Below are positions 4,882 to 42,304 of a DNA stretch of 64,000 nucleotides, piece after piece. The number at the start of each line of letters is the position of its first letter. Within the stretch, counting starts at the first letter, position 1. The translations under genes and the position numbers were made by a program. The notes under the pieces are model-generated. The model worked only from the letters and a program-made list of their open reading frames with translations, was not told the DNA's origin and did not search any database. The stretch covers positions 62,001-126,000 of the IMG/VR virus record IMGVR_UViG_3300038424_000251. The stretch is one strand, 5' to 3'.

Positions 4882-5169
4882 TTATCGTGAAAGTGTAGAA
4901 ATTATCTGATTGTTGAGATAAAATTGTATTCTATTGTCATTAGTTTTGGATAATAATGTATAAGCAAAATTTTGTGACCTACATGCAAAAGCAGTATAAT
5001 GCCGTTTACATTGGTTGTATCTATCTTGTTTTGCTTGTGGTGGTTCACAGGCACACATACGGACTAATATATCCATACATGTAACTAGATTTTGAGATTC
5101 AGGACACATTCCTGCTAATCCATTTCTTATTAGGAAATTATATAAATCATTGGGACCGTTTATATTCAT
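4882..5169 (-). CDS. hypothetical Cys-rich protein
   Basis: 95 aa ORF, coupled to the upstream gene. Confidence 0.6.
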   Translation of the reverse strand: MNINGPNDLYNFLIRNGLAGMCPESQNLVTCMDILVRMCACEPPQAKQDRYNQCKRHYTAFACRSQNFAYTLLSKTNDNRIQFYLNNQIISTLSR

Positions 5170-5540: not shown

Positions 5541-5576
5541 TGTATCAATAAATAGATTATGTGCAATTAAAAAAAC

Positions 5577-5604
5577 TTGTAACGTGAAAAGTTTGTGTTA
5601 AAAT
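5577..5604 (+). promoter_or_regulatory. sigma70-like promoter TTGTAA-16-TAAAAT for the rfbH/epimerase pair
   Basis: Motif match with TG extension. Confidence 0.45.
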
Positions 5605-5617
5605 TATAATTTAAAAT

Positions 5618-10765: not shown

Positions 10766-10791
10766 TATAATTTACATTATATAGCATATTT

Positions 10792-11529
10792 TTATTTCCT
10801 GTATAGTTTAAATTCTGTTATACTTTGCCATTCTGTTAAGTCACCGTAATATTTTTTGAACATATCTGTTGGCACATGTTTATAACTTGAGTCGTTAAAT
10901 GGGATAGTGTATGTATAGTTTCCCCACTTTTTTGTAACATATTCAGCATTGTATGTTCTGGTTTCTGATGGAATCGGTGAGTTAAGATAAGTGGATGAAT
11001 TTCCGTTAAAGTAATGGGGTATGTTTAAACTGATTACTTTTACATCATTTAATTTACAACGGTATTTATAATCATTATCCTCACATCCAGCAAATAAAAA
11101 ATTTTCATCAAATCTTCCTACGGTGTTCCATGTATCTTTGTGTATTCCATATAAAGAGAATTCAAAAGAATTATCATAGGTTCCACATAATACTTTAGGA
11201 GATGTTTGTATGGTTATTTCATTTAAAATTTCTTCTGAAAATCTAGCATCTTCTTCTCCTATTATTATCTTATCTAACTTCATTGTATTAAATGCTATAT
11301 CACAGATTAAATTCCAACCAGCAGAACAGCAAATTTTCTTTGTGGTAAGATAGATGACATTATTTTTAATGTAATCAGGTATTTTTTGTTGGCCATTATC
11401 TATGAAGTACATTTTTGTATTTGGATTATCTTCATGTTTATACCATTCACAAAAATAGTCCACGGCATTATATCCTAATATGAATAAATTATTTTTTATA
11501 TTAAATTCTCTCATAACATGCCCAAGCAA
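10792..11529 (-). CDS. GT2-like glycosyltransferase
   Basis: FIDNG, SAGWN, EED, VGRFDENF..AGCEDNDY. Confidence 0.75.
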   Translation of the reverse strand: MLGHVMREFNIKNNLFILGYNAVDYFCEWYKHEDNPNTKMYFIDNGQQKIPDYIKNNVIYLTTKKICCSAGWNLICDIAFNTMKLDKIIIGEEDARFSEEILNEITIQTSPKVLCGTYDNSFEFSLYGIHKDTWNTVGRFDENFLFAGCEDNDYKYRCKLNDVKVISLNIPHYFNGNSSTYLNSPIPSETRTYNAEYVTKKWGNYTYTIPFNDSSYKHVPTDMFKKYYGDLTEWQSITEFKLYRK

Positions 11530-12133
11530 CTTGCTTAAAATCTGTTTTTGTATATTCTTTCAGATTATTTTTGGTTATAATATCTTTTATATTCTCATAT
11601 CTTATTTCTATCCAACCCCAACCTGAATATGGACCATAATCATGAGCCATTATAACATCTTGTGACTTTAGGAAATCTGCAAAATGATTAAATTCTTTTG
11701 GTTTGTCGCCACCGTCACACAATAAGCATACTTTTTTATTTGATGCTAGTATATCTTTTATGTATTTAATCGATGCTTCGGAAAAACAATCGTCATAAAT
11801 GCCTTTTATATTATTTTTATCAAAATATTCACGCAATCTATCTGAATATTCTTTACTCATATCTGTCATTTTTGTGGTATCATATAAATGGATATCAAAT
11901 GTATGAATATTATACGAAAGATTATGCTTTCTCTTTATTTCATTTAATATTATCGTAAGACCGCCTTTATTGGTTCCAATTTCTATTACTTCATCAAATT
12001 TCTTATCTATCATCAATTTCTCAAAATAATCAATTACAATAAACATTTGAGAAGCAATCCATTCTTCTTTGGAGTTTTTGATTGTAAAACCAAATCCTCC
12101 TCCAGTTCCCCATTTACTAATAATTTCTTCCAT
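11501..12133 (-). CDS. class I SAM-dependent methyltransferase (CmcI/Methyltransf_24-like)
   Basis: VIEIGTNKGG, TFDI, CDGG, AHDY. Confidence 0.75.
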   Translation of the reverse strand: MEEIISKWGTGGGFGFTIKNSKEEWIASQMFIVIDYFEKLMIDKKFDEVIEIGTNKGGLTIILNEIKRKHNLSYNIHTFDIHLYDTTKMTDMSKEYSDRLREYFDKNNIKGIYDDCFSEASIKYIKDILASNKKVCLLCDGGDKPKEFNHFADFLKSQDVIMAHDYGPYSGWGWIEIRYENIKDIITKNNLKEYTKTDFKQVAWACYERI

Positions 12134-12143
12134 AAAATATATT

Positions 12144-13037
12144 TTATTTCATTATTTTTTTAATTTCATCAATAACTTCATCGTCTGTTAAATACGGGTC
12201 CAATACTATATGCCTTTTATCTTTAAAATAATAAATAGGTCCAAGTTTCGGTTCTTTTATTTTTTTTATCACTCCATTCCATCCGTATAGTTGAAGGACA
12301 AAATCGCCCGTTGTAATAGTTCTGCATCCAACGCCACAAGCCATATTACACAGACCGCCTTCTGCTCCAAGGAAAACATCACAATGCTTCATCAAAGAGC
12401 ACTCAAATAAAAGAGATTTCTGATTGCCATCTGTAATGGAAATAGTAGATACTTGTGGTGTTTTTGGGGGAAACCCTATTTCAACAAAATTGAATGTGTC
12501 AGATAAACAAGATAAAATATAGTTTGTATTTCTGTGTTTTCCACCATAACCGAAATCAGGAACATCAATTCCTAATTCATATTCTTTTTTTGTGAATAGA
12601 AAACTTCTTTCAGACCAATTGGCAGCATGTGCTACCACTTTTTTACCATTCTTTCTTAGTTCATCTATAATGTTTTTTGCTACTTCATCATAGGATGAGT
12701 CTGTATAGACAGTAAATTCTGTATCTGGATTTTTTACACTAGCCCATTTTTGGCACTCTAATGGTGGTGGTTCTAAGAAAGAAAACGGTTTCATGTTTAT
12801 TACTTCATCATAATTTTCTAATATGTCTTCGGGAACAGTTGGATATGGCGTTGGAAAAGGAAGTAATCTTACTTTGTCTATGTATGGATTATTAGATAAG
12901 AGTCTGTAAATTTGAGGGAAGGCTATCACATACTCTATTTCATCAAATTTCTTTTCTTCTTTTAATTTTTTAGCAATTGAACTCTGGAAAAAGATATCTC
13001 CAAAATATCCAAAAGTTATTATCAAACATTTATGCAT
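12144..13037 (-). CDS. GT9 (heptosyltransferase-like) glycosyltransferase
   Basis: FGDIF, LSNNPYIDKV, CDVFLGAEGGLCNMACGVG. Confidence 0.75.
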   Translation of the reverse strand: MHKCLIITFGYFGDIFFQSSIAKKLKEEKKFDEIEYVIAFPQIYRLLSNNPYIDKVRLLPFPTPYPTVPEDILENYDEVINMKPFSFLEPPPLECQKWASVKNPDTEFTVYTDSSYDEVAKNIIDELRKNGKKVVAHAANWSERSFLFTKKEYELGIDVPDFGYGGKHRNTNYILSCLSDTFNFVEIGFPPKTPQVSTISITDGNQKSLLFECSLMKHCDVFLGAEGGLCNMACGVGCRTITTGDFVLQLYGWNGVIKKIKEPKLGPIYYFKDKRHIVLDPYLTDDEVIDEIKKIMK

Positions 13038-13395
13038 ATGACTTTTCTTCTATTAGATTAGAATTGGTTTTTTCGTTGATTACTCTTTTTATCCATGATC
13101 TTGCATCATTATTGATATAAATTGTTCTAGCTATTTCAATAAATTCTTTATCAAATAATTGTTGGTCTTCCTTATATCGTATTTTATCTTCGGCATCCCA
13201 TAATATTTTGTTTACTGTTTTTAACGAAACTAAGAAAGAATTAATAGTAGGGTCTTCTAAATTAAAAATGGATTTTAATTGTTCTAGTTCTTTCAATACA
13301 TTTTTTCGTTTTTCTTCGTCGGTTATATTCTCTAATTTAATCATTAAAATAGATATTTTGTCAAGTATTTCTCCATTTGATACTTCAATCTTCAT
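13030..13395 (-). CDS. DUF6165-family protein
   Basis: EVSNGEILDKISIL.IK…LWDAEDKIR…IYINNDAR..IKR.IN…EEKSY. Confidence 0.8.
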   Translation of the reverse strand: MKIEVSNGEILDKISILMIKLENITDEEKRKNVLKELEQLKSIFNLEDPTINSFLVSLKTVNKILWDAEDKIRYKEDQQLFDKEFIEIARTIYINNDARSWIKRVINEKTNSNLIEEKSYA

Positions 13396-14969: not shown

Positions 14970-16705
14970 AAACCTAACGATTTTATTATATTGTTTGTAA
15001 TATTTGGATATGATAGATTTTTAATATACCACTCTCTAGCATTTTTAGCAATATAATCTAAAAATTCATTATCCTTGATAACTTTCTTATATTTTTCACA
15101 AATATCTGATGCAAGTTTTTCTGGATTTTTATATCTAAATTTTTCATCAAGTTCTGCATCGACAGAAATATAATGGTAATCAGGTATCAATGGGTCAAAG
15201 TTTTTTGTTATATATTTTGGCCGTATTGTAGGGATACCAATTCCATATAGTTCAATATCTCTGAGGCAATGGTCCCCGCATGTATAACCACCACCAACTC
15301 CCGAACAAAGTATTAATTTGAAACCCAAACATTCATTAATATAACTGTCAAATGGCGTAGGAAAATTTCCAAAATGAAATTCGTGTTTTAATATTTGTGA
15401 TATGATTTTTATATATTCTCTACATTTATATTCTACTTGAGAAGGATTTTCATATATTGACCCTCGCCAACACAAATTATTATTCAAATCGGTTGATTTT
15501 CTATATTGTTGTATTGCTTCATAATTTGTTATTCCAAATTGCCAGAAAGTTTCAGGATACGGACCCGGATTTATATTTTTTCTTAGATTACTATCTTTTA
15601 TTGTTTCATCCCATAATGTTTCATTATATTGTCCTATTGAAGCTCCTATAAAATTTTTTGATTTAGAAAGTTTAACAGATAATGTTGGAGCATCCCCAAA
15701 ATCATAGGTTTTGAAATGCTTTGTATCATTAAATTCAATAATAGATATTGACCCTTGATTTATTAAAACTTCACAGTCATTTTTATAAGTAAACTTATCG
15801 ATTCCGTCCAAATTTTGCCAGTTTACTTTATACCCCTTTTCTTCCAGATGTTCTATAAACTTTCTAGTAGAATATTGGTCAAATCTTTCATCTATTATGC
15901 TTCTATGAAAGGTATATAAGTTTATAATATTAGTTTTTTGATTGTATCTCCTTAATACCTTTTTCCATGTATCTGTTGCTTTTTTTGTTGGGTTATAAAC
16001 AGCCCAAGGCCTACTAAAACCGCAATGTTTACAAAATACAGAGAATGATTCAATCATTTTTTCAAGAGTTACATCCTTCAATTCAGTAGCAACTGGAGGG
16101 AAATTAAATACACGAGATGCAGCTGCAGCATTTGTACACACAAAAAATCCCTCAGAGTTTAAAGCTTGTCCACAATCAACAGGACTATTACATCCGAGGG
16201 TATATGGTTCATCCATATCTTCTGGGCTATAAAGATGTGGTAAATGTTTAATACTCTTTGCTATATATGGTGTCTTATTCACTGTAAAAATTTCGAAGTT
16301 AAATTCTTTAACAATTTCTATTCCTTTTTTTACTTCATCGCCATATCCGCCTGTACACAAAATTAATTTTACATTAGGATTTGATTCTGCTTTATAGTCT
16401 GACAGTATTTTGCATATTTCTCTTAATCGAGGATGTAAAGCAGATTCTCCACCGTGAAGAACCAACCATTCCCATTTCCAATTTAATTTTTTGGAATCAT
16501 CCACTAATTTTTGTATTTGTTCCACGGTCATTTCTTTGTTGGTTGGAGCTTGCCACGTTAAACTTATACAATTTGGACATTTTAGTGTACACCTATAGGT
16601 AAGATGAATTTCTAAACGATTTAGTGTTGGAACACAATTTAATCTAGCAGTTGGTCCCATATAGAAATTGTTTGGTTTCGTTGGGTCATTTGGAATAGCT
16701 GGCAT
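14966..16705 (-). CDS. radical SAM domain fused to a C-terminal glycosyltransferase-like domain
   Basis: CTLKCPNC, GGES, extra Cys cluster (C…C…C…CKHC); C-terminal WRGS…LRDIELYGIG…PLIPDYHY…IAKNAREWY. Confidence 0.7.
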   Translation of the reverse strand: MPAIPNDPTKPNNFYMGPTARLNCVPTLNRLEIHLTYRCTLKCPNCISLTWQAPTNKEMTVEQIQKLVDDSKKLNWKWEWLVLHGGESALHPRLREICKILSDYKAESNPNVKLILCTGGYGDEVKKGIEIVKEFNFEIFTVNKTPYIAKSIKHLPHLYSPEDMDEPYTLGCNSPVDCGQALNSEGFFVCTNAAAASRVFNFPPVATELKDVTLEKMIESFSVFCKHCGFSRPWAVYNPTKKATDTWKKVLRRYNQKTNIINLYTFHRSIIDERFDQYSTRKFIEHLEEKGYKVNWQNLDGIDKFTYKNDCEVLINQGSISIIEFNDTKHFKTYDFGDAPTLSVKLSKSKNFIGASIGQYNETLWDETIKDSNLRKNINPGPYPETFWQFGITNYEAIQQYRKSTDLNNNLCWRGSIYENPSQVEYKCREYIKIISQILKHEFHFGNFPTPFDSYINECLGFKLILCSGVGGGYTCGDHCLRDIELYGIGIPTIRPKYITKNFDPLIPDYHYISVDAELDEKFRYKNPEKLASDICEKYKKVIKDNEFLDYIAKNAREWYIKNLSYPNITNNIIKSLGL

Positions 16706-19160: not shown

Positions 19161-19832
19161 CTATATTACATTATGACCTTTATTATCTTCAACACTAAAC
19201 AGTTGATTATATCTTAGATTGGTTTGTATTTGTTTTTCTATTGTTTTGTCATGATAAAGAGCTAAATCTTCATCTGCTGGTAGAAAAGCATATTGGTCAT
19301 GGCCAACAATTTTCTCGTGTAATTTTCTATCCCATTTGATTTTTTCTGGAATTCTTTTGTAAATACGACTTTGAAAATCAGGCCAATTAACTATATATCT
19401 GTTTTCACAAAATGGAGAAAATGTTAATCTCCATCCCCATTGTTTAGCATGTTCAGTTGTAACGCCTCTAAAATCATTAATTCTTGGAACGTATATCAAT
19501 TCCACATTTAAATTAGTAGAAATGATGTCCCTCACGTTGAAAATTAATGTTTCAGATGGTAGTTCATCTCCGTCAATTTGGAAAACCCAATCACCAGAAC
19601 ATTTTTCATTTCCATAATTTTTATGTGACCCATAATCATTATTTAGTAAATGCTGAAATACGGTTATTTTTCCCTTAGCTTTGTTTATAATTTTTTTGGT
19701 TTCTTCATTATCTGAAAAATCATCCAATACAACAATTTCATCATCATCAAACTTATTATTTATTAATCGTTCCAAAAGTTTGATTAAAGTATCGGTTTCA
19801 TTATGAATAGTAACTAGGTAAGATATTTTCAT
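19161..19832 (-). CDS. glycosyltransferase family 2
   Basis: ISYLVTIHNE, VLDDFS, FQIDGDE, WPDFQSR, LHE. Confidence 0.85.
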   Translation of the reverse strand: MKISYLVTIHNETDTLIKLLERLINNKFDDDEIVVLDDFSDNEETKKIINKAKGKITVFQHLLNNDYGSHKNYGNEKCSGDWVFQIDGDELPSETLIFNVRDIISTNLNVELIYVPRINDFRGVTTEHAKQWGWRLTFSPFCENRYIVNWPDFQSRIYKRIPEKIKWDRKLHEKIVGHDQYAFLPADEDLALYHDKTIEKQIQTNLRYNQLFSVEDNKGHNVI

Positions 19833-21217
19833 AGTACCGAGCTAGTTACTGAATTGGTTGCTTCAGAACTTGAACTTGTTATTGGTGAAGGTGGATTTAT
19901 AGGTTTTAATTTCGGTAATTCTATCTTTTTCAATTTTGGTAAAATTAGCTTTTGTTCTGTAGCAAATTTAGGAACGTATTTTTCCAGAAGTTCGTAAAAT
20001 CTTTTATCCATAGCTTGAATAGAAAATTCTTCAACATTTTTTTTGCGAAGTTGTTCAGCTTTTTCAAGGAATGCTTTATAAAAATTAAAACAATTTCTCA
20101 TAGATTCCATTGCTTTAGGATAATCAACTGTAAACCATGATGATTCTTTAATCAGCCATTCATTTGCGCAATCTTCTGGAATTTTTTTTATTTCACCATG
20201 TAATAATTTACAAAATTTTGAGTCAAGAAAATCCAAATGACCGCTCCAATTAGAAGCTAATACAGGTTTACCACTTAAAGTAGAAAGCAATAATGGAAGA
20301 CCAAATCCTTCACCATGAGTGAAAGAAATATGTGCTTTAATCTTTGGATGATTATAGAGAGCATTCATTTCTGATTCCGTTAATTCGCCATATAGAATAT
20401 AAACGTTGGGAAGGTCTTTGGTATTTTTTTCCTGTTCAACTATGGACCTAACGGATTTTAATCGGTTAATCATATCGTGTTTATCCATGTTACATATTGC
20501 TGCTCCATTAGTCTTAATAACCAGAGCTGGTTTTCTTTTAGGTCCCATATTGGAAAATGTTATTAAGAAGGTTTTAATCAAATTACCAATATCTTTTCTG
20601 TCATTAAACAAACCACCACTTGTCCATTGACCAACAAAAAGAAAACAAAAATCTTCTTTAATAACAGACAATTCTTCTTCAATTCTTGGTTCAAATGATT
20701 TGTCATTTCCGTAAATTGATGTATCTGCTCCCCAAAATAACACTTCTATTGGTTTTATAGATTTTAATATTATAGGTGATTGGTTTGGTGCGGCTGGTTT
20801 TTGATATAATGGTTCTTCAAATACACTTTTAGCATGATTTGAAGTAACAATATTAAAATTCATTCTATTCAATCCTTCAATCCAATCTGTTCTGGCTAAG
20901 GTCGTCTCAATACCAGCAGTTATACCAATATTATATTTTGCTGGTGGTTGAAATTCATTAGGAATAGAACACTGAATAAATAATTCTGGTTGTTTAGACA
21001 ATGGTTGTCTAACAATTCTTTTGTATAATTCTTGCTCTGCAGAATCAGTTACATCTGAAAATAAATATTTTCTACTGCAATTACCCCAACGAGTAGGAAC
21101 TATCATCAAGTCATATTTGTCATATCTGAGCAAGCTTTTAGCTAAGGCTAATCCCAGATCACCATAGCCTGACCTAGTCCAAACCGGGGATTGAAAAATA
21201 CATATTGGTTTGTTCAT
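19829..21217 (-). CDS. GT4 glycosyltransferase
   Basis: SGYG, FLFVGQW…RKD, HGEGFGLP…KPVLASNWSGHLDF. Confidence 0.85.
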   Translation of the reverse strand: MNKPICIFQSPVWTRSGYGDLGLALAKSLLRYDKYDLMIVPTRWGNCSRKYLFSDVTDSAEQELYKRIVRQPLSKQPELFIQCSIPNEFQPPAKYNIGITAGIETTLARTDWIEGLNRMNFNIVTSNHAKSVFEEPLYQKPAAPNQSPIILKSIKPIEVLFWGADTSIYGNDKSFEPRIEEELSVIKEDFCFLFVGQWTSGGLFNDRKDIGNLIKTFLITFSNMGPKRKPALVIKTNGAAICNMDKHDMINRLKSVRSIVEQEKNTKDLPNVYILYGELTESEMNALYNHPKIKAHISFTHGEGFGLPLLLSTLSGKPVLASNWSGHLDFLDSKFCKLLHGEIKKIPEDCANEWLIKESSWFTVDYPKAMESMRNCFNFYKAFLEKAEQLRKKNVEEFSIQAMDKRFYELLEKYVPKFATEQKLILPKLKKIELPKLKPINPPSPITSSSSEATNSVTSSVL

Positions 21218-21227
21218 ATTATGATAC

Positions 21228-21926
21228 TCATTTCTCTCTTTCTTTTATCATGGTTTCATATTTTTTTGGAGCGGGGATTTCTGATGCTCCTGTTTTCTTC
21301 CATCTATCCATTAAATTATTAGCTTCTTTAGGAGATTCAATTTTTTTTTCTGTAATATGAATAGTATTGGTACCACTGCTGCCAAATCCACCAGAACCAC
21401 GTTCGGTAGTTGTCAAGTCAGCAACTACAACCCAATCAATGGGGTTTGTTACTTCTGACACAAGTTGACCGATTTTGTCGCCTTTTTTGTAGATTTTTTC
21501 CATATTGATTTTACCTCTTAAAGTTTTTCTTCCCCAACCAAATTCTTTTGTATTTACAGTTTCATTAATTGGAACAACACAAGAAAACATGTCATCCGGT
21601 TGCCAGATATATTTAAAACAAAGAAGTAATTCGCCTCTATAATCATTATCAATTAACCCAATACTGTTTGCTAGAATCAAATTATATTTTCTCAAGCTTG
21701 AACGTGGAAAAATAAGCGTATGATAATTTTGATTGTATGTGTCTGTTTGTGGAGAAATGAATAACCCTGTTTTATATTCAATATAATCTATTGATTTCCA
21801 ATCATCTCCGTCTTGTTTTCCAATAATTTTGGGGTCTTCCAATGCTATAACGTCATAGCCAGAAGATTGTGAAGTAGCTGCTTGAGGTATAACTAAACCA
21901 TCTGAATTTTTAACGTGTATTTTCAT
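21228..21926 (-). CDS. dut: trimeric dUTPase
   Basis: SSGYD, PRSS, GLIDNDYRGEL, GDKIGQL, RGSGGFGSSG. Confidence 0.95.
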   Translation of the reverse strand: MKIHVKNSDGLVIPQAATSQSSGYDVIALEDPKIIGKQDGDDWKSIDYIEYKTGLFISPQTDTYNQNYHTLIFPRSSLRKYNLILANSIGLIDNDYRGELLLCFKYIWQPDDMFSCVVPINETVNTKEFGWGRKTLRGKINMEKIYKKGDKIGQLVSEVTNPIDWVVVADLTTTERGSGGFGSSGTNTIHITEKKIESPKEANNLMDRWKKTGASEIPAPKKYETMIKEREK

Positions 21927-21933
21927 GTAACCA

Positions 21934-21961
21934 ATTATATCGTAAAAATTGGATTATTCAA
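21934..21961 (-). promoter_or_regulatory. sigma70-like promoter TTGAAT-16-TATAAT, 7 nt before the dut ATG
   Basis: Motif match on the minus strand. Confidence 0.65.
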
Positions 21962-21965
21962 GTTT

Positions 21966-22172
21966 CTATAATTTTATTTCTAAAAGGTCTATGGTTGTAG
22001 ATGATTTATCATATATGATAATAGGTAATTTTTTGTTACTAATTCCTATTTCTTTTGACATTTCATCACCTATTTTATTGGCATATTTTTTATAATCTTC
22101 CTGTTTTCCGAAACGATTACTATCAAGACCTATCAATAAAACCGTCTTAGTTTTGGGTTTTATTTTTTTCAT
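21966..22172 (-). CDS. hypothetical protein
   Basis: 68 aa ORF coupled to the upstream GT. Confidence 0.55.
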   Translation of the reverse strand: MKKIKPKTKTVLLIGLDSNRFGKQEDYKKYANKIGDEMSKEIGISNKKLPIIIYDKSSTTIDLLEIKL

Positions 22173-23671
22173 ATATTTGCACTTTCTATTTGTTGTTTAA
22201 TTTTTTCTTGGTCAAATTTGGGAATTTCAAATCCCATTCCACCCGGCATCAAATTACCTACATAATCATTTTCGGTAAAAATACTAAAAGGTTTTACGGA
22301 CTTGAAATTATTCAAAGTATAATCCATACATTTGATAAATTCATTACACATGTTTTCAGAATTGATACCACCTTCATTCATTGCCCATCTTCTTCCTTCT
22401 TCACCACATTTTGTTCTTTTTTCATCTCCCATCAAATACCAGTACATTAATCCTTCAGCCGCATCTTCCCAACGTGTCATATCATCAAAAATATATGGTG
22501 TTGGAATAGAACCCTGAATGCATTGAACGAGTGGATATACAGGATACGCCCATATACCATGTTTCTTATATTTACCTATATTATTAGAACCAAAATGTAA
22601 ATCAAATTCTATGGGTGAACCATCATCCTTGGTTTGCCCTATTTGGTCTTGAAGTCCACCAGTTACAGCTGTAATAATAGGTGTGCCAGCCATAAGTGAT
22701 TCTGCAGTTGAAAGACCAAATCCTTCATTTGATGACAGATTAATAGTGACATCAGCAATGTTATATAATAAGTTTAAATCTTCTGGTGGATATTTTGCTG
22801 TTGAAAACATAACATCATAGTTTGGACAGAAGGCTTCTTTAACGGCCAGCAAATCTGTTCCAGCTTCTTGACGAACTTCTGTATGTAATATCAATATACA
22901 TTTTTCTGATTCTTCTTTTGGAAGATTGTCACAAAATGCTTTATAGGCTAACATGATATTACTTGTTCTCTTTCTTTGAACATTTCGTGAATTGTAAAAG
23001 ATTATGAAGTTATAATCCTTATTATGAAACATATCTTTGCGTCGTTTTTGTAAATTGGTATCATCTTTTGGAAGAGGATGGAATATTTTACTATTAATTC
23101 CATGAGGAACATAATGTAATACAGTCTTATTATCTGTATCTTTAGAATCGATGGTGGAAACTTTATCTGGTCCTAACACCCATTTGTTTATGTTATACGT
23201 TTGTTTGCTGATTGACATTAATAAATCACATGATTCGTAGTATGGTCTGTTGTACATTGGAAATGGGATATCATCCCAAATATTCAAGTAAGTTAAGGGC
23301 ATTTTAGAACGAATTTGCCTTTCTATAGCATATAACCATCCCCAGAATCTTGGATCTGTAAAATGAAGAAGTGCATCAGGTTTTTCTCTCTCAACAATAC
23401 TAAATAAAATTTCTTCATTTCCATAACCATCAACAGGATATAAAGTTACTTTTGCATCTTTAATGCCTGAAATTTGTGCGGTAGCTGCATCCATGTTGAC
23501 TATTTTACCTTTTTCAGGATGTTGAATTGCACCGGCAATCTGAACCCAATCATAATGTTTGACGGTCCCTAAAACGACTTCTCTTGTCATAGTAGCCACA
23601 CCTGAATGCATCCTCAAGTCATCGGACAAACATATTATTTTTGGTTTAGCCATAATGATTTTAAGAACCAA
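22169..23671 (-). CDS. GT4 glycosyltransferase
   Basis: HSGVA, VPHG, SRNVQRK, YNIADVTINLSSNEGFGLSTAESLMAGTP. Confidence 0.9.
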   Translation of the reverse strand: MVLKIIMAKPKIICLSDDLRMHSGVATMTREVVLGTVKHYDWVQIAGAIQHPEKGKIVNMDAATAQISGIKDAKVTLYPVDGYGNEEILFSIVEREKPDALLHFTDPRFWGWLYAIERQIRSKMPLTYLNIWDDIPFPMYNRPYYESCDLLMSISKQTYNINKWVLGPDKVSTIDSKDTDNKTVLHYVPHGINSKIFHPLPKDDTNLQKRRKDMFHNKDYNFIIFYNSRNVQRKRTSNIMLAYKAFCDNLPKEESEKCILILHTEVRQEAGTDLLAVKEAFCPNYDVMFSTAKYPPEDLNLLYNIADVTINLSSNEGFGLSTAESLMAGTPIITAVTGGLQDQIGQTKDDGSPIEFDLHFGSNNIGKYKKHGIWAYPVYPLVQCIQGSIPTPYIFDDMTRWEDAAEGLMYWYLMGDEKRTKCGEEGRRWAMNEGGINSENMCNEFIKCMDYTLNNFKSVKPFSIFTENDYVGNLMPGGMGFEIPKFDQEKIKQQIESANI

Positions 23672-23935: not shown

Positions 23936-24466
23936 TTATATTTTGGGAATGTGTTTCCACATTCGGCCTTTAGCAATCTTACATACTAATCCTCTGGAAA
24001 TATTGAATTTTTGACCTATTTGGGAATAAGAAAAATTGTTCTTTTTTATAAGTTTATTGATTTGAATAACTTTTTTATCATTTAATTTTTTAACAGATGA
24101 TTTCTGTTTTTTAGAAGTAGATTTTTCTATATTTTCTTTATGTGTTATGTATTCAAGATTTTTATAGAAATTATTTCTTGAATTTTCATCTTTGTGATTT
24201 ATATCAAATGAATTTTTACATAAAGGACAATATGAATTGCCTGAAAGAAATGCATCGGCAACAAGTTTGTGGACATTATAAGTTTTACTTTGACCATCTT
24301 TACATAAAGTGATAAGAGCGTAATTACCTTTTGAAGATTGTTTTAACATTTTAGGTTTTTTGTTGGCCACGAGTCTGTGAATATAAGAAATTCTTTTTAT
24401 GTTTCCTATAGAGGAAACTTGATACAGACCCTCATATCCCTTTACATCTTTCCAAATCTCATTCAT
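23936..24466 (-). CDS. NUMOD4-HNH homing endonuclease with C-terminal HTH
   Basis: EIWKDVKGYEGLYQVSSIG (NUMOD4), VHKLVADAF, INHKDENSRNN..NLEY. Confidence 0.9.
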   Translation of the reverse strand: MNEIWKDVKGYEGLYQVSSIGNIKRISYIHRLVANKKPKMLKQSSKGNYALITLCKDGQSKTYNVHKLVADAFLSGNSYCPLCKNSFDINHKDENSRNNFYKNLEYITHKENIEKSTSKKQKSSVKKLNDKKVIQINKLIKKNNFSYSQIGQKFNISRGLVCKIAKGRMWKHIPKI

Positions 24467-24531: not shown

Positions 24532-25077
24532 TTATTTTATTCTTTTCGGATAAAGCTTTGGTGGCAACTTATTTCTGAGAGCTTTTATATTACCACGAAG
24601 AATATAAGCGTATTTATGAAATCCTGTTTTGGATTTACCAAGATATATTGCGTTGGTGGCTTGATAAACTGTTCCAATATGACCAGCTTTTTCATTGGCA
24701 TTTGTTATCACCACTTTTACGTTGGGTTCGTCTTGTTTTAGGAGTTTTAGTGTTTGTGCGATAACATAAGATTCCAGATTAGGAATACCAACGTCAGCAA
24801 GATATAATCTTTTCAAATCCAACACTTCTCCCGACATAGCTTCTGGGCTTAGAAATTTTGAAGCAGAATACATTGGAAGTCCATATATAGCCATCCCAAT
24901 TGCCATCTTTTGTTGGCCATGAGGATATTTGTATCTCACGACATATATTCTTTTGACGCGAGCTGGTATAGTATGAAGATAATGTTTCTTAGCTAGTTGT
25001 ATTATTGCTTCCCTTGTAGCAGGAACAACCTCTACTTCATCTTGTAATCCTTCAATAATAAGCTTTTTAAGATTCAT
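24532..25077 (-). CDS. Mom-like (GNAT fold) DNA modification protein
   Basis: KHYL, IGMAIYG.P, LKRLY…PNLES..IAQTLK, GHIGTVYQATN..YLG. Confidence 0.75.
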   Translation of the reverse strand: MNLKKLIIEGLQDEVEVVPATREAIIQLAKKHYLHTIPARVKRIYVVRYKYPHGQQKMAIGMAIYGLPMYSASKFLSPEAMSGEVLDLKRLYLADVGIPNLESYVIAQTLKLLKQDEPNVKVVITNANEKAGHIGTVYQATNAIYLGKSKTGFHKYAYILRGNIKALRNKLPPKLYPKRIK

Positions 25078-26425
25078 ACCCTTTCATCTGTTGTTCAGAA
25101 GTTTGAATAAGTTTTTTGATAATATCTTCTGCTTTACCACCACCCAATAAAACCTCTTTTATATGTGGTATGGATAATCTGTAAAAAAGTTTTTTAACAA
25201 TAGGGAGATATTCTATTTTATCTGCTGGTATCAATTGTCGGAGTCTATTATCCAAACCCGGACCTGCTAGAAATTGTTTTAATTCATCACTCAATGGTTC
25301 CACATCCAATTCTTTTTGAGAAGCAATATCCATAGAAAGATACTCACCTATACCTTTAACTAATTCATGAATCAATAATACAAAATTTCTTCCTCTAACT
25401 TTAATAGTATATTTGTCACCTGTAGGAATTATTTCTTCACTTCCAACCGCAGCAGTATCTACAAACATTCTAGTAAATCGTATTTTGGGTAATCTATAAT
25501 TGAGAACCAGAGATACAGCCGATACAAGTCCATATTTTTGTGGTAAGGTTCGGTCTATTTTTTGTAATTCCTCATTTACTTCATTAAAAAGGAAAAATTT
25601 GTTAAGAGCATCTCCTTGAGTGATATAATTTGCCAAAGTTCTTCTTAATTTACTTTCAATGTCTCCCGATAATGCTGAATAAATTTGAGCATTAAGATTT
25701 TCAGCAACAGTCAGTTCATTACCCATCATTTGGTTCATTTCATCTTCAGCAATAGCATTTGTCAAATCAGCAGAAGCTAGTTTAACGTCTATAATGATTT
25801 CTCCCGACTGAACAAGTTGTTTTATGAATTTATACTCTCGAAGATTTAGAACCAAATTGACGGCAAGTTTTTCAAGTTGTGATTTTCTATTTCTTTCTAT
25901 ATCTTCAATTTGGATTGCTGTTGTCATAAGTAATTCCAACATAGATGGTAGAGTTGGAAACAATCTTTGAAGATTTGCTACAGGTTGTTCGACATAATGA
26001 GCAAGTCTATCTACTGCTTTACGATAACCTTCACTTGTAATAATTTCAAGGTATTTATCTGCATTACTTCCAAGATTTGGAAATATTGCTTCAACATAAT
26101 CAGTTTCATTTTCTATTGCTGCTCTTTTTTCAGGATGAATGAAATCTGGGTAGTCTCCAATATTTATGGTTTCTTTTATACCTTTTCTTGCGTTTATGAA
26201 TAATTGAACATCGTGTGATAAAGCTTTTGGTTTAGGACGAATGCCCGGTCTTGTTGGTTGAAGTGGATGGGGTGTTTTTGGAGTAGGCGGCTGAATAGGA
26301 GTAGGTTGTCTAACTGGAGATGGAGCAGGTTTAGTTGGTGGTGGTGGTGCAGTTGTTTGTTCGTTGGGTGATAAAGTCTCTTCAACTACTAACTTGATTA
26401 TATTCCTCAACTGACTTCTTTTCAT
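25067..26425 (-). CDS. putative internal virion protein (start reassigned to MKRSQLRNIIKLVVEE)
   Basis: K..L..II..V.EE leader, Pro-rich linker, VLLIHELVKG motif; ATG at 26425 avoids overlap with the divergent gene. Confidence 0.6.
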   Translation of the reverse strand: MKRSQLRNIIKLVVEETLSPNEQTTAPPPPTKPAPSPVRQPTPIQPPTPKTPHPLQPTRPGIRPKPKALSHDVQLFINARKGIKETINIGDYPDFIHPEKRAAIENETDYVEAIFPNLGSNADKYLEIITSEGYRKAVDRLAHYVEQPVANLQRLFPTLPSMLELLMTTAIQIEDIERNRKSQLEKLAVNLVLNLREYKFIKQLVQSGEIIIDVKLASADLTNAIAEDEMNQMMGNELTVAENLNAQIYSALSGDIESKLRRTLANYITQGDALNKFFLFNEVNEELQKIDRTLPQKYGLVSAVSLVLNYRLPKIRFTRMFVDTAAVGSEEIIPTGDKYTIKVRGRNFVLLIHELVKGIGEYLSMDIASQKELDVEPLSDELKQFLAGPGLDNRLRQLIPADKIEYLPIVKKLFYRLSIPHIKEVLLGGGKAEDIIKKLIQTSEQQMKGYES

Positions 26426-26441: not shown

Positions 26442-27959
26442 ATGAAATTGTTTGAGTTAAAGTCATTGATAGAAAGCATCGTTTCTGAGGAAATAAATAA
26501 AGAACAGTTAAACTCTGTAGCTAAAACTTTACATATTCCTGTTGGTAAATTGAACGCATGGGTAAAAGGTGTTGACCCTACTTCAAGGCAATCTTTTTCT
26601 GTATGGATACTTCGGATGCTAAAAAATCAACAAATAAGATTTGAAGACAGTCTTAGAGTAGGAAGTGCTATAAACCGATTTATTCAACTTAGAAATGCTA
26701 ATAGGATAGAAGACATAATGAGATTTCCAACAATTCATGAATTGGAAACAAGAATGGACCAACTAGAAGGTCAGGGTTCAAAAAGACAGGGATTTGCTGG
26801 GGTAAATCCATTAACTCTTCCGGGAGTTGAAATATTGGAAAAGAGACCTGATATAACATTCTATAAGGTAACTAATCCAAGTTCATTGGCAAAAATGGGA
26901 GAGGGAACAAAATGGTGTACTAGATTTTCTTTTAATAAAAGTATAAGTACTGCAAAAGGATATATAGATAGATACGGATATTTGGTAATTGGATATAAAG
27001 ATGGAAAACCTTATGTTCAATACAACCCCGATTACAGTCAAGTAATGGATGTTAATGATGTAAGTTTTCATCATGTTAGTAGAGAAATAGCAAAACAATT
27101 AAATCTTCCACCACCAGAAATTATTAAAAGACCTCTGCCTAAAATAGACCCAAGTAAATATCCACCACTTCGTACTACAAAAAAAAGAGAATTTAAACCT
27201 GAAACTCCTGCTCAAACTAAATTAAGAAGTTGGTTAAAATTTACGACTCAACGAAAACCAGAATGGGAAAAATTTATTAAATCTAAATCTGACCGCAAGA
27301 GTACAAAAGGAAAAGATATAGATTATGAACAAAGGGTTGCTAGAGCAATTACAAGAAGTACTCATCCATTTCATATTGACCGAGTAATGTATTATTTTGT
27401 AGATTATGCTAAAAAGGAAATTCCCGGAGAACGTTCTCCTGTAATAGAAAAAGCAATATTGGAAAAAGACTTTAAACCAACTATGGTGGCAGGAAAAGGA
27501 GGACGTGGTTCTGGTTCAAGAACTCGAATACCCGGTATTGATGGCATAATATTTTATGTTAAAAATAATATTAAATCAAATTGGCCTGAATTTGAACAAA
27601 AAATACAAAATGATGCAGCCAATTCTGTAAAATATTATACGAATACTGGATTAAATCCAGATAATATACCTGATGGAATAGTAAAAGATATGGTATTATT
27701 TGTAAAATTTATCAAGGATAAACACATTACACCATCAAAAGAAAAATTTGAAGCATCTATAGTAGATTTCATTTCAAGAGCAAGAAATCAGTTTAAATAT
27801 GGTCAATTTTCTCCTATTTTATATAATGTTATTATTCCATACATGGAATTGGTTAAAAAACCATTAATAAGAATTGTTGGTTCTAAATTATACAACATTC
27901 TTACACGTAGTAATGCAACATTTAGGGGTGTTGTAAAAAGAACGGAAAATGGATTTTAG
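26442..27959 (+). CDS. putative internal virion protein with GTKWC motif
   Basis: MKLFELKSLIESIVSEE leader; MGEGTKWCT motif of the kind seen in large-phage proteins. Confidence 0.6.
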   Translation: MKLFELKSLIESIVSEEINKEQLNSVAKTLHIPVGKLNAWVKGVDPTSRQSFSVWILRMLKNQQIRFEDSLRVGSAINRFIQLRNANRIEDIMRFPTIHELETRMDQLEGQGSKRQGFAGVNPLTLPGVEILEKRPDITFYKVTNPSSLAKMGEGTKWCTRFSFNKSISTAKGYIDRYGYLVIGYKDGKPYVQYNPDYSQVMDVNDVSFHHVSREIAKQLNLPPPEIIKRPLPKIDPSKYPPLRTTKKREFKPETPAQTKLRSWLKFTTQRKPEWEKFIKSKSDRKSTKGKDIDYEQRVARAITRSTHPFHIDRVMYYFVDYAKKEIPGERSPVIEKAILEKDFKPTMVAGKGGRGSGSRTRIPGIDGIIFYVKNNIKSNWPEFEQKIQNDAANSVKYYTNTGLNPDNIPDGIVKDMVLFVKFIKDKHITPSKEKFEASIVDFISRARNQFKYGQFSPILYNVIIPYMELVKKPLIRIVGSKLYNILTRSNATFRGVVKRTENGF

Positions 27960-35638: not shown

Positions 35639-35868
35639 AAATAAAAAGTAAAAAATTAAGTAAAATTGAAAAAGAAATTGGTAAATGTATGGAAAAGTAT
35701 ATAGGAGAGCCTATAGATGATATCACTTTGTCAAAAATTGAAAAATCAGTCCAAAAATTAATAAATAATTGTTTTCCAAATCAATATAAAGTTATAATGG
35801 ACAGGTCAAATAATTCTCCAAAAAATATAGACAATCAAATTTTAAATATTGACCTAATTTTAAAATGA
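35635..35868 (+). CDS. mini-protein resembling the contractile tail sheath C-terminal domain
   Basis: IGEPIDDIT…YKVIMDRSNNSPKNIDNQILNIDLILK compared with the sheath consensus FEPND..T…V.CDE.NNTP..ID.N.L..DI. Confidence 0.55.
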   Translation: MKIKSKKLSKIEKEIGKCMEKYIGEPIDDITLSKIEKSVQKLINNCFPNQYKVIMDRSNNSPKNIDNQILNIDLILK

Positions 35869-36662
35869 AGTTTGATTACACAATCAAAGAAGTAAATAAA
35901 TTTACCGCAGCTAAATTAGTTCAACAACATCACTATTCCAAGGTAATGCCTAAACTTACCAAGCATTATCTTGGTGTATTTATTGGTGATAAGATGGTTG
36001 GTGTACTAACTCTTGGATGGGGAACGCAACCCCGCCAAACTATCAATAAACTTTTTCCCGGTCTTACAACCAAGGACTATTATGAAATTGGTAAGATGTG
36101 TATGCTTCCTGAAATGCCCAAAAATTCTGAATCACAAATGTTATCTGCAATTATCAAATGGATAAAAATACATTTGCCAGAAAAGCTATTTCTATATACA
36201 TGGGCTGATGGTATTGTTGGTAAAGTTGGTTATGTGTATCAATCAGCAAATTTCTATTATGGTGGTTTCATTTGGACGGATATTTATATTAGCCCTGATG
36301 GGGAGAAAATTCATCCAAGAACCTCACATAATCTTTGTATAGAGAATGCTAAGTTTTGTAATAAAGAAAAGATATTCTGGTTGACCCGAGATTTTATGAA
36401 ATTGAAAGGAATCACTAGAATAAGAGGAAAACAATTCAGATATATTATGCCTTTATCTAAAATGGCTAGAAAAATGCTTGACAAATCTACTGTTAGATGG
36501 ACAATAGATTATCCTAAAGAAGAAGATTTAGAATGGAAAAAACAAATTGATGGTGGTTATGAACTAATTAAAGAATTGCCAAAAATTGATTTGGGAATGG
36601 TCAATATAAATAAAAAGAATGTCAATTCTTATAAAAGGGAAGAAAATCAATTTTTTGGATAA
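35865..36662 (+). CDS. Mom-like (GNAT fold) DNA modification protein
   Basis: HHYS, VGVLTLG, EIGKMC…PKNSESQMLS, TWAD….GYVYQSANFYYGG. Confidence 0.8.
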   Translation: MKFDYTIKEVNKFTAAKLVQQHHYSKVMPKLTKHYLGVFIGDKMVGVLTLGWGTQPRQTINKLFPGLTTKDYYEIGKMCMLPEMPKNSESQMLSAIIKWIKIHLPEKLFLYTWADGIVGKVGYVYQSANFYYGGFIWTDIYISPDGEKIHPRTSHNLCIENAKFCNKEKIFWLTRDFMKLKGITRIRGKQFRYIMPLSKMARKMLDKSTVRWTIDYPKEEDLEWKKQIDGGYELIKELPKIDLGMVNINKKNVNSYKREENQFFG

Positions 36663-41554: not shown

Positions 41555-42304
41555 ATGGCAAAAAAAGTCATTAAAAGAGTTATTAAGGAAAATACCTTTG
41601 AAGCAGGACCATCAGGGGGAACGGGCGCAACAAACTACCAAACTCCCTACGGTACTCCAAGCGGTGGAAATACCACACAAGGTCCATCTCATTTTTCTTC
41701 TTCCGATAAAGCAGACCATTTTTATCCTAATACTCCTTCTGGTTCTGCTATGCCTTCTTCATCTGATGAAACAGGTAATAGAAGCAAAATAAAAACAGGA
41801 TATCCAGATGGTAAAATAGTTGATATGGACAAAAGTGAAACTGATGATGGTGAAGGAATAGCTGGGAAAAATATGGGAACTCAGATTATGAGTCCTGCTG
41901 GAGCAGCTGGCAATAAACAAGCAGACAGACCTTTAAATCCAGACCAACGTTTTGACCCACAGGTTGACAAACTATTTCAAGGAAAAAGACATACTCCATC
42001 TCCCGATGAAATAATGTCAGCACTTCAATACGAATTAAGTCAGATGGTTAAGAAAGATAAATCTATAGCTAAACAAACAGTATTGAAAAATCTTAAAACC
42101 GACCCACATTACTACAGTAGGCTACTTATGTTAAATATTGATGATAAAAAAATGAAAGTTGATGAAACCACTTTTTCTAAAACTAAAGCAGTTCTTGATG
42201 AAATGATTGCTGCTAAAAAGAAAAATAGAGCAGTAGAAAATTCTCCTGAAATAACCGAAATCTTTAAGGATTTATACGATAAAAGAAATGCCTTAAGAAA
42301 ATAA
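41555..42304 (+). CDS. putative internal head protein with DUF5661-like helical domain
   Basis: MAKKVIKRVIKE leader, G/S/T-rich region, AKQTVLKNLKTDPHYYSRL. Confidence 0.6.
   Translation: MAKKVIKRVIKENTFEAGPSGGTGATNYQTPYGTPSGGNTTQGPSHFSSSDKADHFYPNTPSGSAMPSSSDETGNRSKIKTGYPDGKIVDMDKSETDDGEGIAGKNMGTQIMSPAGAAGNKQADRPLNPDQRFDPQVDKLFQGKRHTPSPDEIMSALQYELSQMVKKDKSIAKQTVLKNLKTDPHYYSRLLMLNIDDKKMKVDETTFSKTKAVLDEMIAAKKKNRAVENSPEITEIFKDLYDKRNALRK

What the first reader, a model, noticed from the sequence alone, without database searches (positions are those of the whole stretch)
24532..25077. Mom-like acyltransferase with a putative capsid-targeting leader: possibly a virion-packaged modifier
Seen: unlike the other Mom-like gene, this one starts MNLKKLIIEGLQDE, resembling the leaders of the putative head proteins (MKLFELKSLIE, MAKKVIKRVIKE, MLLNEIVKGVILE). 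It is translationally coupled to one of them, and the usual Mom Y/W-A-D position reads NAN. Established: T4 internal proteins carry a ~10-aa capsid-targeting leader removed by the prohead protease after (I/L)xE. Inference: a GNAT enzyme packaged in the head and ejected with the DNA, acting on incoming or packaged DNA or on a host target.
Basis: inference. Interest (0 to 1): 0.7.

Follow-up and report, generated by a model that had tools for sequence, protein, structure and literature searches.

The report
Capsid-targeted mini-Mom enzyme, jumbo phage
A 365-kb T4-like phage from peat encodes a shortened Mom-type enzyme that starts with the 9-10-residue tag found on about 30 unrelated proteins of the phage, and this tag matches in length and key positions the one phage T4 uses to load proteins into its head and inject them with the DNA.

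Summary
ORF 24532-25077(-) is a Mom-family GNAT (Pfam 84 bits; best structural match is Mu Mom, Z 19). Its first nine residues, MNLKKLIIE, fit an N-terminal motif (M-I-K-L-K-x-L-I-x-E). That motif occurs on 34 of 506 proteins of this genome but in only 3 of 1257 internal windows. The tagged proteins are otherwise unrelated to each other. The genome is T4-like: it has a gp21-type prohead protease and a gp23 capsid protein. The motif has the same register as the T4 capsid-targeting sequence MKTYQEFIAE: hydrophobic at positions 4, 7 and 8, and Glu at 10. Related phages with the same protease carry the same leader, also on their Mom homologues. Distant Moms and the two full-length Mom paralogues in this genome lack it. 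The enzyme is a "mini-Mom". It keeps the residues equivalent to Mu Mom R111, S124 and Y159. It lacks the helix-turn-helix-like insertion that Mu Mom needs to modify DNA, and it reads Asn at the catalytic Asp149 position (NAN). The best reading is a head-packaged, protease-trimmed, injected enzyme or binding protein whose target is probably not Mu-style DNA adenine. Packaging itself has not been shown.

The parts
24532..25077 (-). Pre-protein of the leader-tagged mini-Mom (181 aa)
   Evidence: ORF. Pfam Mom 84.2 bits and PHROG 1384. AF2 model pLDDT 85, with Mu Mom 8bv8 as best match at Z 19.3 and 165 aligned residues.
25051..25077 (-). Leader, codons 1-9 (MNLKKLIIE): putative capsid-targeting propeptide, with a predicted cut after Glu9 (I-I-E|G)
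   Evidence: Scores 16.1 bits against the genome-wide leader matrix. P1 is Glu in 32/32 and P3 is Leu/Ile in 31/32 subfamily members. It lies N-terminal to the Pfam Mom match. The GNAT core starts at residues 13-15 in structural alignments, and residues 1-10 have pLDDT about 59.
24532..25050 (-). Predicted mature mini-Mom (G10-K181, pI 9.9) plus stop codon
   Evidence: Keeps R90, S103, H32/Y33 and Y138, which correspond to Mu Mom R111, S124, H58/Y59 and Y159. Only 10 residues separate YQATNA from HKYAY, where Mu Mom has its HTH-like insertion. The C-terminal YPK is shared with Mu Mom.
24694..24702 (-). N126-A127-N128 at the Mom F/Y/W-A-D(149) position
   Evidence: Read directly from the sequence. 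Asp in 29/32 subfamily members; Asn only in the target, P0002 and P0003. Mapped to Mu Mom.
25067..25077 (-). 11-nt overlap between the stop of the upstream gene and the start of mini-Mom
25067..26425 (-). Upstream leader-bearing gene (452 aa from Met19: MKRSQLRNIIKLVVEE, then a Pro-rich linker), function unknown
   Evidence: Leader 13.5 bits at the internal Met. The orthologue in L016 starts MKRHNLREFITK at that position. No Pfam, PHROG or Atlas lead.
26442..27959 (+). Divergent leader-like gene (505 aa, MKLFELKSLIES), function unknown
   Evidence: 8.3 bits, weak. The orthologue in L016 reads MWLKSLIREE. No family hit.
23936..24466 (-). HNH/NUMOD4 homing endonuclease inserted just downstream; a neighbour, not part of the system
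   Evidence: Pfam NUMOD4 and HNH_3, PHROG 59 at 2.8e-36. Absent at this position in the syntenic locus L016.
35865..36662 (+). Full-length Mom paralogue without a leader (265 aa, W-A-D, insertion present); used for comparison
   Evidence: Pfam Mom 184 bits, profile positions 2-194. Aligned to Mu Mom across the insertion.
41555..42304 (+). Another protein with a weak leader-like start (MAKKVIKRVIKE, 249 aa)
   Evidence: 9.4 bits.

Best explanation
The gene encodes a pre-protein with two parts.

**Leader.** Residues 1-9 (MNLKKLIIE) are a T4-type capsid-targeting propeptide. This phage lineage attaches the same kind of leader to roughly 30 unrelated cargo proteins. Inferred steps: the leader docks the protein into the scaffolding core of the prohead. 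The phage's gp21-type protease then cuts after Glu9 (Ile at P3, Glu at P1). The basic mature protein (G10-K181, pI 9.9) stays in the head with the DNA and is ejected into the host at infection, as T4 Alt and IPI-III are.

**Cargo.** The cargo is a 'mini-Mom'. It has the Mom-type GNAT fold and keeps the residues equivalent to Mu Mom R111, S124, H58/Y59 and Y159. It has lost the HTH-like insertion that Mu Mom needs to modify dsDNA. In this clade it also reads Asn for Asp149. It therefore most likely acts on something other than Mu-style DNA adenine, for example a charged tRNA or a host protein, or it works as a binding or decoy protein. It would do so before any phage gene is expressed.

**Shown versus inferred.** Shown: family membership, fold, motif statistics, presence of the protease, and conservation across relatives. 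Inferred: targeting, cleavage, packaging, ejection and substrate.
For: - **T4-like head machinery.** Peptidase_S77 scores 93.8 bits and PHROG 207 scores 1.8e-52 at G000 342792-343421. gp23 scores 198.7 bits. The capsid protein carries ..NQAKQLIEE|ATATG about 60 residues in.
- **Motif enrichment.** 34/506 N-termini against 3/1257 internal windows score above 12 bits, p = 5e-16. The target scores 16.1 bits.
- **Cargo proteins are unrelated.** The 30 leader proteins share nothing beyond the leader; one weak blastp pair was found. Codons at the Leu/Ile positions follow genome usage, so selection acts on the peptide.
- **Same register as T4.** T4 IPII and IPIII start MKTYQEFIAE. Targeting depends on residues 4 and 7, and processing on residues 8 and 10 (PMC9026906). 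The consensus here is hydrophobic at 4, 7 and 8 with Glu at 10.
- **Leader sits on core-module genes.** Genes flanking the protease carry it, as do several enzymes: three GNATs, a CCA-adding enzyme, a lysozyme and a serine hydrolase.
- **Relatives.** Three related records have the protease and the same leader on 17/362, 5/113 and 9/139 ORFs. Their Mom homologues start MIKLKELILE|GLKD and MITFKSLLIE|SLKD.
- **Leader follows the close clade.** Leader-like starts occur in 10/20 of the closest 50%-identity clusters against 3/100 of the distant ones. The two full-length paralogues in this genome lack it.
- **Leader lies outside the GNAT core**, and its residues have low pLDDT.
- **Cargo tends to be basic.** Median pI is 8.8 against 7.6, p = 0.025.
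Against: - There are no virion proteome, N-terminal sequencing or expression data. No RNA run was listed.
- Most mini-Mom homologues start with only MVLLE|KLKDE. That is four residues before the invariant Glu, shorter than any proven CTS; T4 Alt loses 7 residues. The invariant E9/L11 could therefore also reflect a structural or functional N-terminal segment.
- Residues 7-13 of the model overlay the ordered pre-beta1 segment of Mu Mom. In Mu Mom, deleting 20 N-terminal residues lowers activity.
- The gene lies among replication, nucleotide and glycosyltransferase genes, not in the head module.
- TerL also scores 13.5 bits, so the matrix gives occasional false positives.
- The D149N change and the missing insertion may mean the protein is not an active transferase.
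Confidence: 0.6

Rival explanations
1. The leader is a real shared N-terminal signal but serves another purpose, such as co-localisation, regulated turnover, or high translation initiation from Lys/Ile-rich codons. On this reading, mini-Mom is an ordinary cytoplasmic enzyme that acts on replicated phage DNA or another intracellular substrate and is not packaged.
For: The gene sits in a replication/glycosyltransferase region. Synteny with GT4 and dUTPase-like genes is conserved in L016. No direct evidence of packaging exists.
Against: - The motif has the length and key positions of the T4 CTS and of the gp21 cleavage rule.
- It occurs on genes flanking the prohead protease, and the capsid protein carries a similar ..LIEE|A sequence about 60 residues in.
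- Synonymous codon use argues against a nucleotide-level signal.
- The leader occurs in every related record that has Peptidase_S77.
Confidence: 0.15
2. The N-terminal helix is an integral functional part of this Mom subfamily, for example for tRNA or substrate binding or for dimerisation. Its likeness to other N-termini would then be convergence on an amphipathic helix.
For: E9 and L11 are invariant even in homologues that start only four residues upstream. Model residues 7-13 align to Mu Mom residues from 20 onward. Mu Mom with the first 20 residues deleted loses activity.
Against: - The same nine-residue pattern heads about 30 unrelated proteins.
- Several homologues carry an extra CTS-like segment upstream (..KILKE-YVILE..), and others have the full MIKLK..LE.
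- The first 10 residues have pLDDT about 59.
- The Pfam Mom model starts after the leader.
Confidence: 0.08
3. The protein is targeted into the prohead but serves only as a core/scaffold-type filler that the protease degrades. Alternatively it stays in the capsid and is never delivered as an active enzyme.
For: In T4, many core proteins with the same cleavage motif are degraded. The Asp149-to-Asn change and the loss of the insertion suggest reduced catalysis.
Against: - The active-site-region motifs are conserved very strongly: GHxGxxYQATNAIYLG, R90, E102-S103 and HKYxY are invariant over 32 sequences of 46-81% identity. That argues for a maintained biochemical function.
- The protein is a compact folded domain, unlike the scaffold proteins.
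Confidence: 0.1

Closest known systems
T4 internal proteins IPI, IPII, IPIII and Alt (CTS-targeted, gp21-processed, ejected head proteins)
   Same: - A short N-terminal leader of about 10 residues, hydrophobic at 4, 7 and 8, with Glu at the cut site.
- A gp21-family protease in the same genome.
- The leader is the only feature shared among diverse, mostly basic cargo proteins.
- One T4 cargo (Alt) is also an enzyme that acts on the host at entry.
   Different: - The leader sequence is different (MIKLKxLIxE against MKTYQEFIAE).
- About 30 candidate cargo proteins against about 4-8 in T4.
- The cargo here is a Mom-type GNAT, which neither the T4 head-assembly papers read here nor three later full-text searches list as a CTS cargo.
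- Nothing has been shown experimentally.
Bacteriophage Mu Mom (PDB 8bv8; Gly-tRNA(Gly)-dependent adenine N6 modification of dsDNA)
   Same: - Same Pfam family.
- Best structural match: Z 19.3, rmsd 2.5 A over 165 residues.
- Equivalents of R111, S124, H58/Y59 and Y159 are conserved, as is the C-terminal YPK.
   Different: - It lacks the HTH-like insertion (residues 175-209) that Mu Mom needs for activity.
- Asp149 is Asn and Arg151 is Lys.
- It carries an N-terminal leader.
- Mu Mom is a late cytoplasmic enzyme and is not known to be packaged.
Ejection/inner-body proteins of giant phages phiKZ, 201phi2-1 and SPN3US
   Same: Many head-internal proteins are processed after Glu by a gp21-related protease, and their propeptides are thought to target them into the prohead.
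   Different: Those propeptides are mostly over 100 residues long and variable, with an A/S/G-x-E motif. Here the leader is a short, nearly uniform T4-style tag with L/I-x-E.
tRNA-acting GNAT toxins (TacT, AtaT) and injected polyvalent proteins with GNAT domains
   Same: They have the GNAT fold, and AtaT is among the Foldseek matches. The idea that injected GNAT domains act on host targets is already in the literature (PMC7824862).
   Different: No specific sequence relationship was found. Proposing a tRNA or protein as target is only a hypothesis, prompted by the loss of the DNA-binding insertion.

Membership tests
Mom family (Pfam PF25680) / GNAT superfamily | Significant match to the family model | tested here: met
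   84.2 bits against a cut-off of 27.1, E 1.3e-23. PHROG 1384 at 9.6e-25.
Mom family (Pfam PF25680) / GNAT superfamily | GNAT fold closest to Mu Mom | tested here: met
   AF2 pLDDT 85. 8bv8_A scores Z 19.3 against 11-13 for other GNATs.
Mom family (Pfam PF25680) / GNAT superfamily | Essential residues R111 and S124 of Mu Mom | tested here: met
   R90 and S103 align to them and are invariant in 32 subfamily members (residue roles from PMC13219725).
Mom family (Pfam PF25680) / GNAT superfamily | Asp149 (the F/Y/W-A-D motif) | tested here: not met
   The target reads N126-A127-N128. Asp is present in 29/32 relatives and in both paralogues of this genome.
Mom family (Pfam PF25680) / GNAT superfamily | Arg151 | tested here: not met
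   Lys130 in the target. The position is variable in the subfamily, and reads Ile or Glu in the full-length paralogues, so it is not a family-wide feature.
Mom family (Pfam PF25680) / GNAT superfamily | HTH-like insertion between beta6 and beta7 (Mu Mom 175-209), required for DNA modification | tested here: not met
   Only 10-13 residues lie between YQATN and HKYxY in the mini clade, against 49-64 in full-length relatives. The Pfam match stops at profile position 138 of 202.
Mom family (Pfam PF25680) / GNAT superfamily | Aminoacyl-tRNA-dependent modification of adenine in dsDNA | not testable with these tools
   Needs an enzyme assay.
T4-type CTS-bearing internal head protein | N-terminal leader of about 10 residues ending in (L/I)-x-E, hydrophobic at the targeting positions | tested here: met
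   MNLKKLIIE has Leu at -6, Leu at -3, Ile at -2 and Glu at 0 relative to the cut. This is the same register as MKTYQEFIAE.
T4-type CTS-bearing internal head protein | gp21-family prohead protease and gp23-type capsid protein in the same genome | tested here: met
T4-type CTS-bearing internal head protein | The leader is the only feature shared among otherwise unrelated proteins of the phage | tested here: met
   34/506 N-termini carry it, and there is no similarity beyond the leader.
T4-type CTS-bearing internal head protein | Leader removed by the protease | not testable with these tools
   The complex prediction of protease with pre-protein gave no verdict. Needs a cleavage assay or N-terminal sequencing.
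T4-type CTS-bearing internal head protein | Protein present in virions and ejected | not testable with these tools
   The phage is uncultured and comes from peat/wetland metagenomes. No proteome is available and no RNA run was listed.

The most novel reading that the evidence does not exclude
A lineage of far-T4 phages, some of them jumbo, uses one 10-residue capsid-targeting tag to load its heads with dozens of different enzymes. These include several GNATs, a CCA-adding enzyme, a lysozyme, a hydrolase and Mom-type transferases. The injected mini-Mom would be a Mom derivative that uses charged tRNA, or acts on it, in the first seconds of infection, before any phage gene is expressed. Its target would be a host component or the entering DNA ends, not replicated DNA.
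Probability: 0.2. Interest if true: 0.85.

Novelty: new variant of a known kind. Interest (0 to 1): 0.62.

Why it matters
T4's capsid-targeting sequence is the textbook way a phage smuggles proteins into its host, but only a handful of T4 cargo proteins are known.

Here the same logic appears on about 7% of the proteome of a 365-kb phage, and across related phages. The tagged proteins include enzymes no one has linked to virions: a Mom-type transferase, other GNATs and a CCA-adding enzyme.

If confirmed, three things follow:
- A sequence rule would predict the injected protein set of a large group of uncultured T4-like phages.
- Mom-family enzymes would be shown to have been recruited for roles at the moment of DNA entry.
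- A naturally minimised Mom without the DNA-binding insertion would help separate donor binding from acceptor binding in this newly understood tRNA-dependent enzyme family.

The short, uniform tag could also be used to load foreign proteins into Bacteroidota phages such as the cultured Flavobacterium phage immuto, which carries the same type of leader.

Tried and rejected
- **Complex prediction.** Prohead protease with pre-mini-Mom gave no verdict (score 0.01). It counts neither for nor against.
- **T4 late promoter TATAAATA.** It is not enriched in the genome (52 and 65 sites against about 55 expected). It lies upstream of 2/35 leader genes and 17/471 others. This gives no information on timing.
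- **Expression data.** The phage recurs in peat/wetland DNA runs. No RNA run was listed.
- **Megablast of the region against GenBank phages.** No match.
- **tblastn of mini-Mom and of the full-length leader-Mom P0033 against cultured phages.** All matches begin after the leader, so no cultured phage with a leader-Mom was found.
- **Pfam scan of the 90-390-aa C-terminal extensions in relatives.** No domains, so no functional hint.
- **Pfam, PHROG and Atlas on the two neighbouring leader genes.** Nothing useful.
- **Gut 'Jug' jumbo phage origin.** Considered because of the similar size and T4-like nature. Set aside because all holders are peat/wetland samples.
- **Leader similarity due to paralogy.** Rejected.
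- **Nucleotide-level motif.** Rejected.

Full report
**What is there**

The ORF at window 24532..25077 (minus strand) encodes 181 residues beginning MNLKKLIIEGLQDE. An in-frame stop lies three codons upstream of the ATG, so the start is not in doubt.

The protein matches Pfam Mom (PF25680) at 84.2 bits, E 1.3e-23, and PHROG 1384 'Mom-like DNA modification protein' at E 9.6e-25. The Pfam match covers only residues 22-155, which is profile positions 10-138 of 202.

The upstream gene ends in a TAA 11 nt inside the ORF, so coupled translation is plausible.

**The genome**

The window is bases 62001-126000 of a single 365,299-bp virus record with 33% G+C. The genome is T4-like:
- a gp21-type prohead protease (Pfam Peptidase_S77 93.8 bits; PHROG 207 at 1.8e-52) at G000 342792-343421;
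- a gp23 major capsid protein (198.7 bits) at 354066-355913;
- a large terminase.

By capsid protein, the nearest cultured relatives are Microcystis phage Mel-JY01, Flavobacterium phage immuto and Rhodothermus phage RM378. The sequence recurs in peat and wetland metagenomes from 2017-2021.

The genome holds three Mom-like genes: the target and two full-length ones. One is at window 35865-36662. The other is outside the window at G000 56423-57199.

**The leader is a genome-wide signal**

Listing all N-termini revealed a recurrent start of the form M-I-K-L-K-x-L-I-x-E. I trained a nine-column matrix on the genome and compared N-termini with internal windows:
- above 12 bits: 34 of 506 N-termini against 3 of 1257 internal 25-residue windows (Fisher p = 5e-16);
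- above 14 bits: 27 against 1.

The target scores 16.1 bits. It is one residue shorter than the consensus, but it keeps Leu at -6, Leu at -3, Ile at -2 and Glu at 0.

After the leader is removed, 30 leader proteins show no similarity to one another, apart from one weak pair. The motif is therefore not a relic of paralogy. The Leu and Ile positions use synonymous codons in genome-typical proportions, so selection acts on the peptide and not on the RNA.

Leader proteins fall into these groups:
- the genes on both sides of the prohead protease;
- a block of eleven adjacent genes at G000 3088-13199;
- among recognisable domains, three GNAT acetyltransferases, a CCA-adding/poly(A)-polymerase-type enzyme with an HD domain, a phage lysozyme, a serine hydrolase and a DUF3846 protein.

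The capsid protein carries ..NQAKQLIEE|ATATG about 60 residues in. The only leader hit on a protein with a clearly different role is the terminase, at 13.5 bits. About one false positive is expected at that threshold. Cargo proteins tend to be basic: median pI 8.8 against 7.6, p = 0.025. The mature target has pI 9.9.

**Comparison with T4**

T4 IPII and IPIII both begin MKTYQEFIAE. According to PMC9026906, the first ten residues of IPIII suffice for packaging. Targeting depends mainly on residues 4 and 7, and processing on residues 8 and 10. Alt loses only seven residues. PMC3012670 describes the T-even internal proteins as diverse proteins that share only the CTS.

The consensus found here is M1 I2 K3 L4 K5 x6 L7 I8 x9 E10. 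It is hydrophobic at 4, 7 and 8 and has Glu at 10, the same length and register as the T4 CTS. It also obeys the gp21 rule of L/I at P3 and Glu at P1.

**Relatives**

Homologues of the target form a tight subfamily. In an alignment of 32 members at 46-81% identity:
- the residue aligned to Glu9 is Glu in 32/32;
- P3 is Leu or Ile in 31/32.

N-terminal architectures vary:
- The target clade reads M(N/K)LKxLIxE|GLxDE.
- Many members start MVLLE|KLKDE.
- Several have an extra CTS-like segment in front, for example ..AKVKRILKE-YVILE|KLKDE.
- One group has a 140-residue N-terminal domain ahead of ..SLQE|GLKDE.

I then examined five related IMG/VR records. The three larger fractions (279, 131 and 134 kb) all encode Peptidase_S77. 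They carry the same leader on 17/362, 5/113 and 9/139 ORFs. Their Mom homologues begin MIKLKELILE|GLKD and MITFKSLLIE|SLKD. That clade (P0033, 249 aa) is full length: it keeps the insertion and an R-A-D motif. A leader-tagged Mom is therefore not peculiar to the shortened form.

Among the best 150 representatives at 50% identity from 1.84 billion proteins, a leader-like start is present in 10/20 of the closest clusters, 4/30 of the next, and 3/100 of the rest. Distant Moms and the two paralogues in this genome start directly at the GNAT core.

A Logan contig carrying an MVLLE-type mini-Mom is syntenic with the window. Its gene order is leader gene, leader gene, mini-Mom, small ORF, GT4 glycosyltransferase, dUTPase-like gene.

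The cultured Flavobacterium phage immuto has the same kind of leader (MKKSQLRQIIKE) and a similar capsid-protein sequence (..NQAKQIVSE|ANVTG). No cultured phage was found with a leader-tagged Mom.

**The enzyme**

AlphaFold2 with the subfamily alignment gives a confident GNAT fold, with mean pLDDT 85. Residues 3-11 form a helix of low confidence (about 59), and beta1 begins at residue 15.

Mu Mom (8bv8) is by far the best structural match: Foldseek E 4e-10, and VIA-align Z 19.3 against 11-13 for other GNATs. Generic GNATs align from model residues 13-15. Mu Mom aligns from residue 7.

Mapping onto Mu Mom, with residue roles taken from PMC13219725:

| Mu Mom | Target | Note |
|---|---|---|
| R111 | R90 | invariant in the subfamily |
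| S124 | S103 | invariant in the subfamily |
| H58/Y59 | H32/Y33 | kept; equivalence inferred from the conserved KHY motif, outside the aligned stretch |
| Y159 | Y138 | kept |
| C-terminal YPK | YPK | kept |
| D149 | N128 | Asn only in the target, P0002 and P0003 |
| R151 | K130 | variable in the family |
| HTH-like insertion 175-209 | absent | absent from the whole mini clade |

In the mini clade, 10-13 residues lie between YQATN and HKYxY, against 49-64 in full-length relatives. In Mu Mom, deleting that insertion abolishes activity and D149A greatly reduces it. A Mu-style reaction on dsDNA adenine is therefore unlikely. The strong conservation of the remaining active-site motifs argues that the protein still does something specific.

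**Best explanation and its limits**

The most economical reading is as follows. The gene makes a pre-protein whose nine-residue leader docks it into the prohead core. The leader is cut off after Glu9 by the gp21-type protease. The basic mini-Mom domain is left in the head to be ejected with the DNA, by analogy with T4 Alt and the IPs. I give this about 0.6.

What is shown: family, fold, motif statistics, the presence of the protease, and the evolutionary pattern. What is inferred: targeting, cleavage, packaging, ejection and substrate.

Points against:
- the very short MVLLE starts of many homologues;
- the overlay of residues 7-13 on an ordered N-terminal segment of Mu Mom, together with the reduced activity of Mu Mom lacking its first 20 residues;
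- the position of the gene outside the head module;
- the complete lack of proteomic or expression data.

The rivals are: a shared N-terminal signal with another purpose (0.15); a prohead-targeted protein that is degraded or never delivered as an active enzyme (0.10); and an integral N-terminal helix of the subfamily (0.08).

**Novelty**

CTS-directed packaging and the idea that T4-like phages use it to load varied proteins are established. Mom enzymes in jumbo phages have been noted, typically fused to nucleases (PMC7824862). The T4 head-assembly papers read here and three later full-text searches turned up no description of a Mom-type enzyme with a CTS, of an insertion-less mini-Mom, or of a T4-like phage with some thirty CTS-tagged proteins. 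That is absence in the held library, not proof of absence. I class the finding as a new variant of a known kind.

Noticed in passing
window 23936-24466 (-): An HNH/NUMOD4 homing endonuclease lies directly downstream of mini-Mom. The syntenic locus L016 has no gene there, so it looks like a recent mobile insertion.
   Followed up: partly
G000:C1 3088-13199 (outside the window; L008): Eleven adjacent genes all start with the MIKLKxLIxE-type leader. They include three GNAT acetyltransferases, a CCA-adding/poly(A)-polymerase-type enzyme with an HD domain, and a phage lysozyme. This looks like a dedicated 'cargo' island.
   Followed up: partly
window 35865-36662 (+) and G000:C1 56423-57199 (+): Two full-length Mom paralogues (W-A-D and Y-A-D motifs, insertion present) carry no leader. 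The phage therefore has three Mom-type genes of two architectures.
   Followed up: partly
window 19829-23671 (-) and locus L016 3432-13123: A block of GT4-type glycosyltransferase (Pfam GT4-conflict in L016), a long dUTPase-like protein and further sugar-nucleotide enzymes sits next to mini-Mom in both phages. It may be a glycosylation or DNA-modification module.
   Followed up: no
G000:C1 236023-236409 (+): This protein starts MKKAFTLIELMIVVAILGLLAAIV, a type IV pilin/pseudopilin-like prepilin N-terminus encoded by the phage.
   Followed up: no
G000:C1 140315-140536 (+): A short gp23-like fragment (22 bits) is interrupted by three stop codons. It may be a decayed capsid-gene remnant.
   Followed up: no
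proteins P0051-P0061, P0076 (relatives); G002 248836-250047: Many mini-Mom relatives carry C-terminal extensions of 90-390 residues with no Pfam match. One clade has a 140-residue N-terminal domain ahead of an internal ..SLQE|GLKDE junction, which could be an internal protease site.
   Followed up: partly
protein P0071: A separate leader-bearing Mom cluster reads Y-A-N, so the Asp149-to-Asn change has arisen more than once.
   Followed up: no
locus L110 (Flavobacterium phage immuto_3-5A, MW353176.1) 6248-7006 and 16415-16636: This cultured far-T4 phage has the same leader type (MKKSQLRQIIKE, MKKSQIVKAVQE) and a similar capsid-protein sequence. It is a possible experimental model for the leader.
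   Followed up: partly
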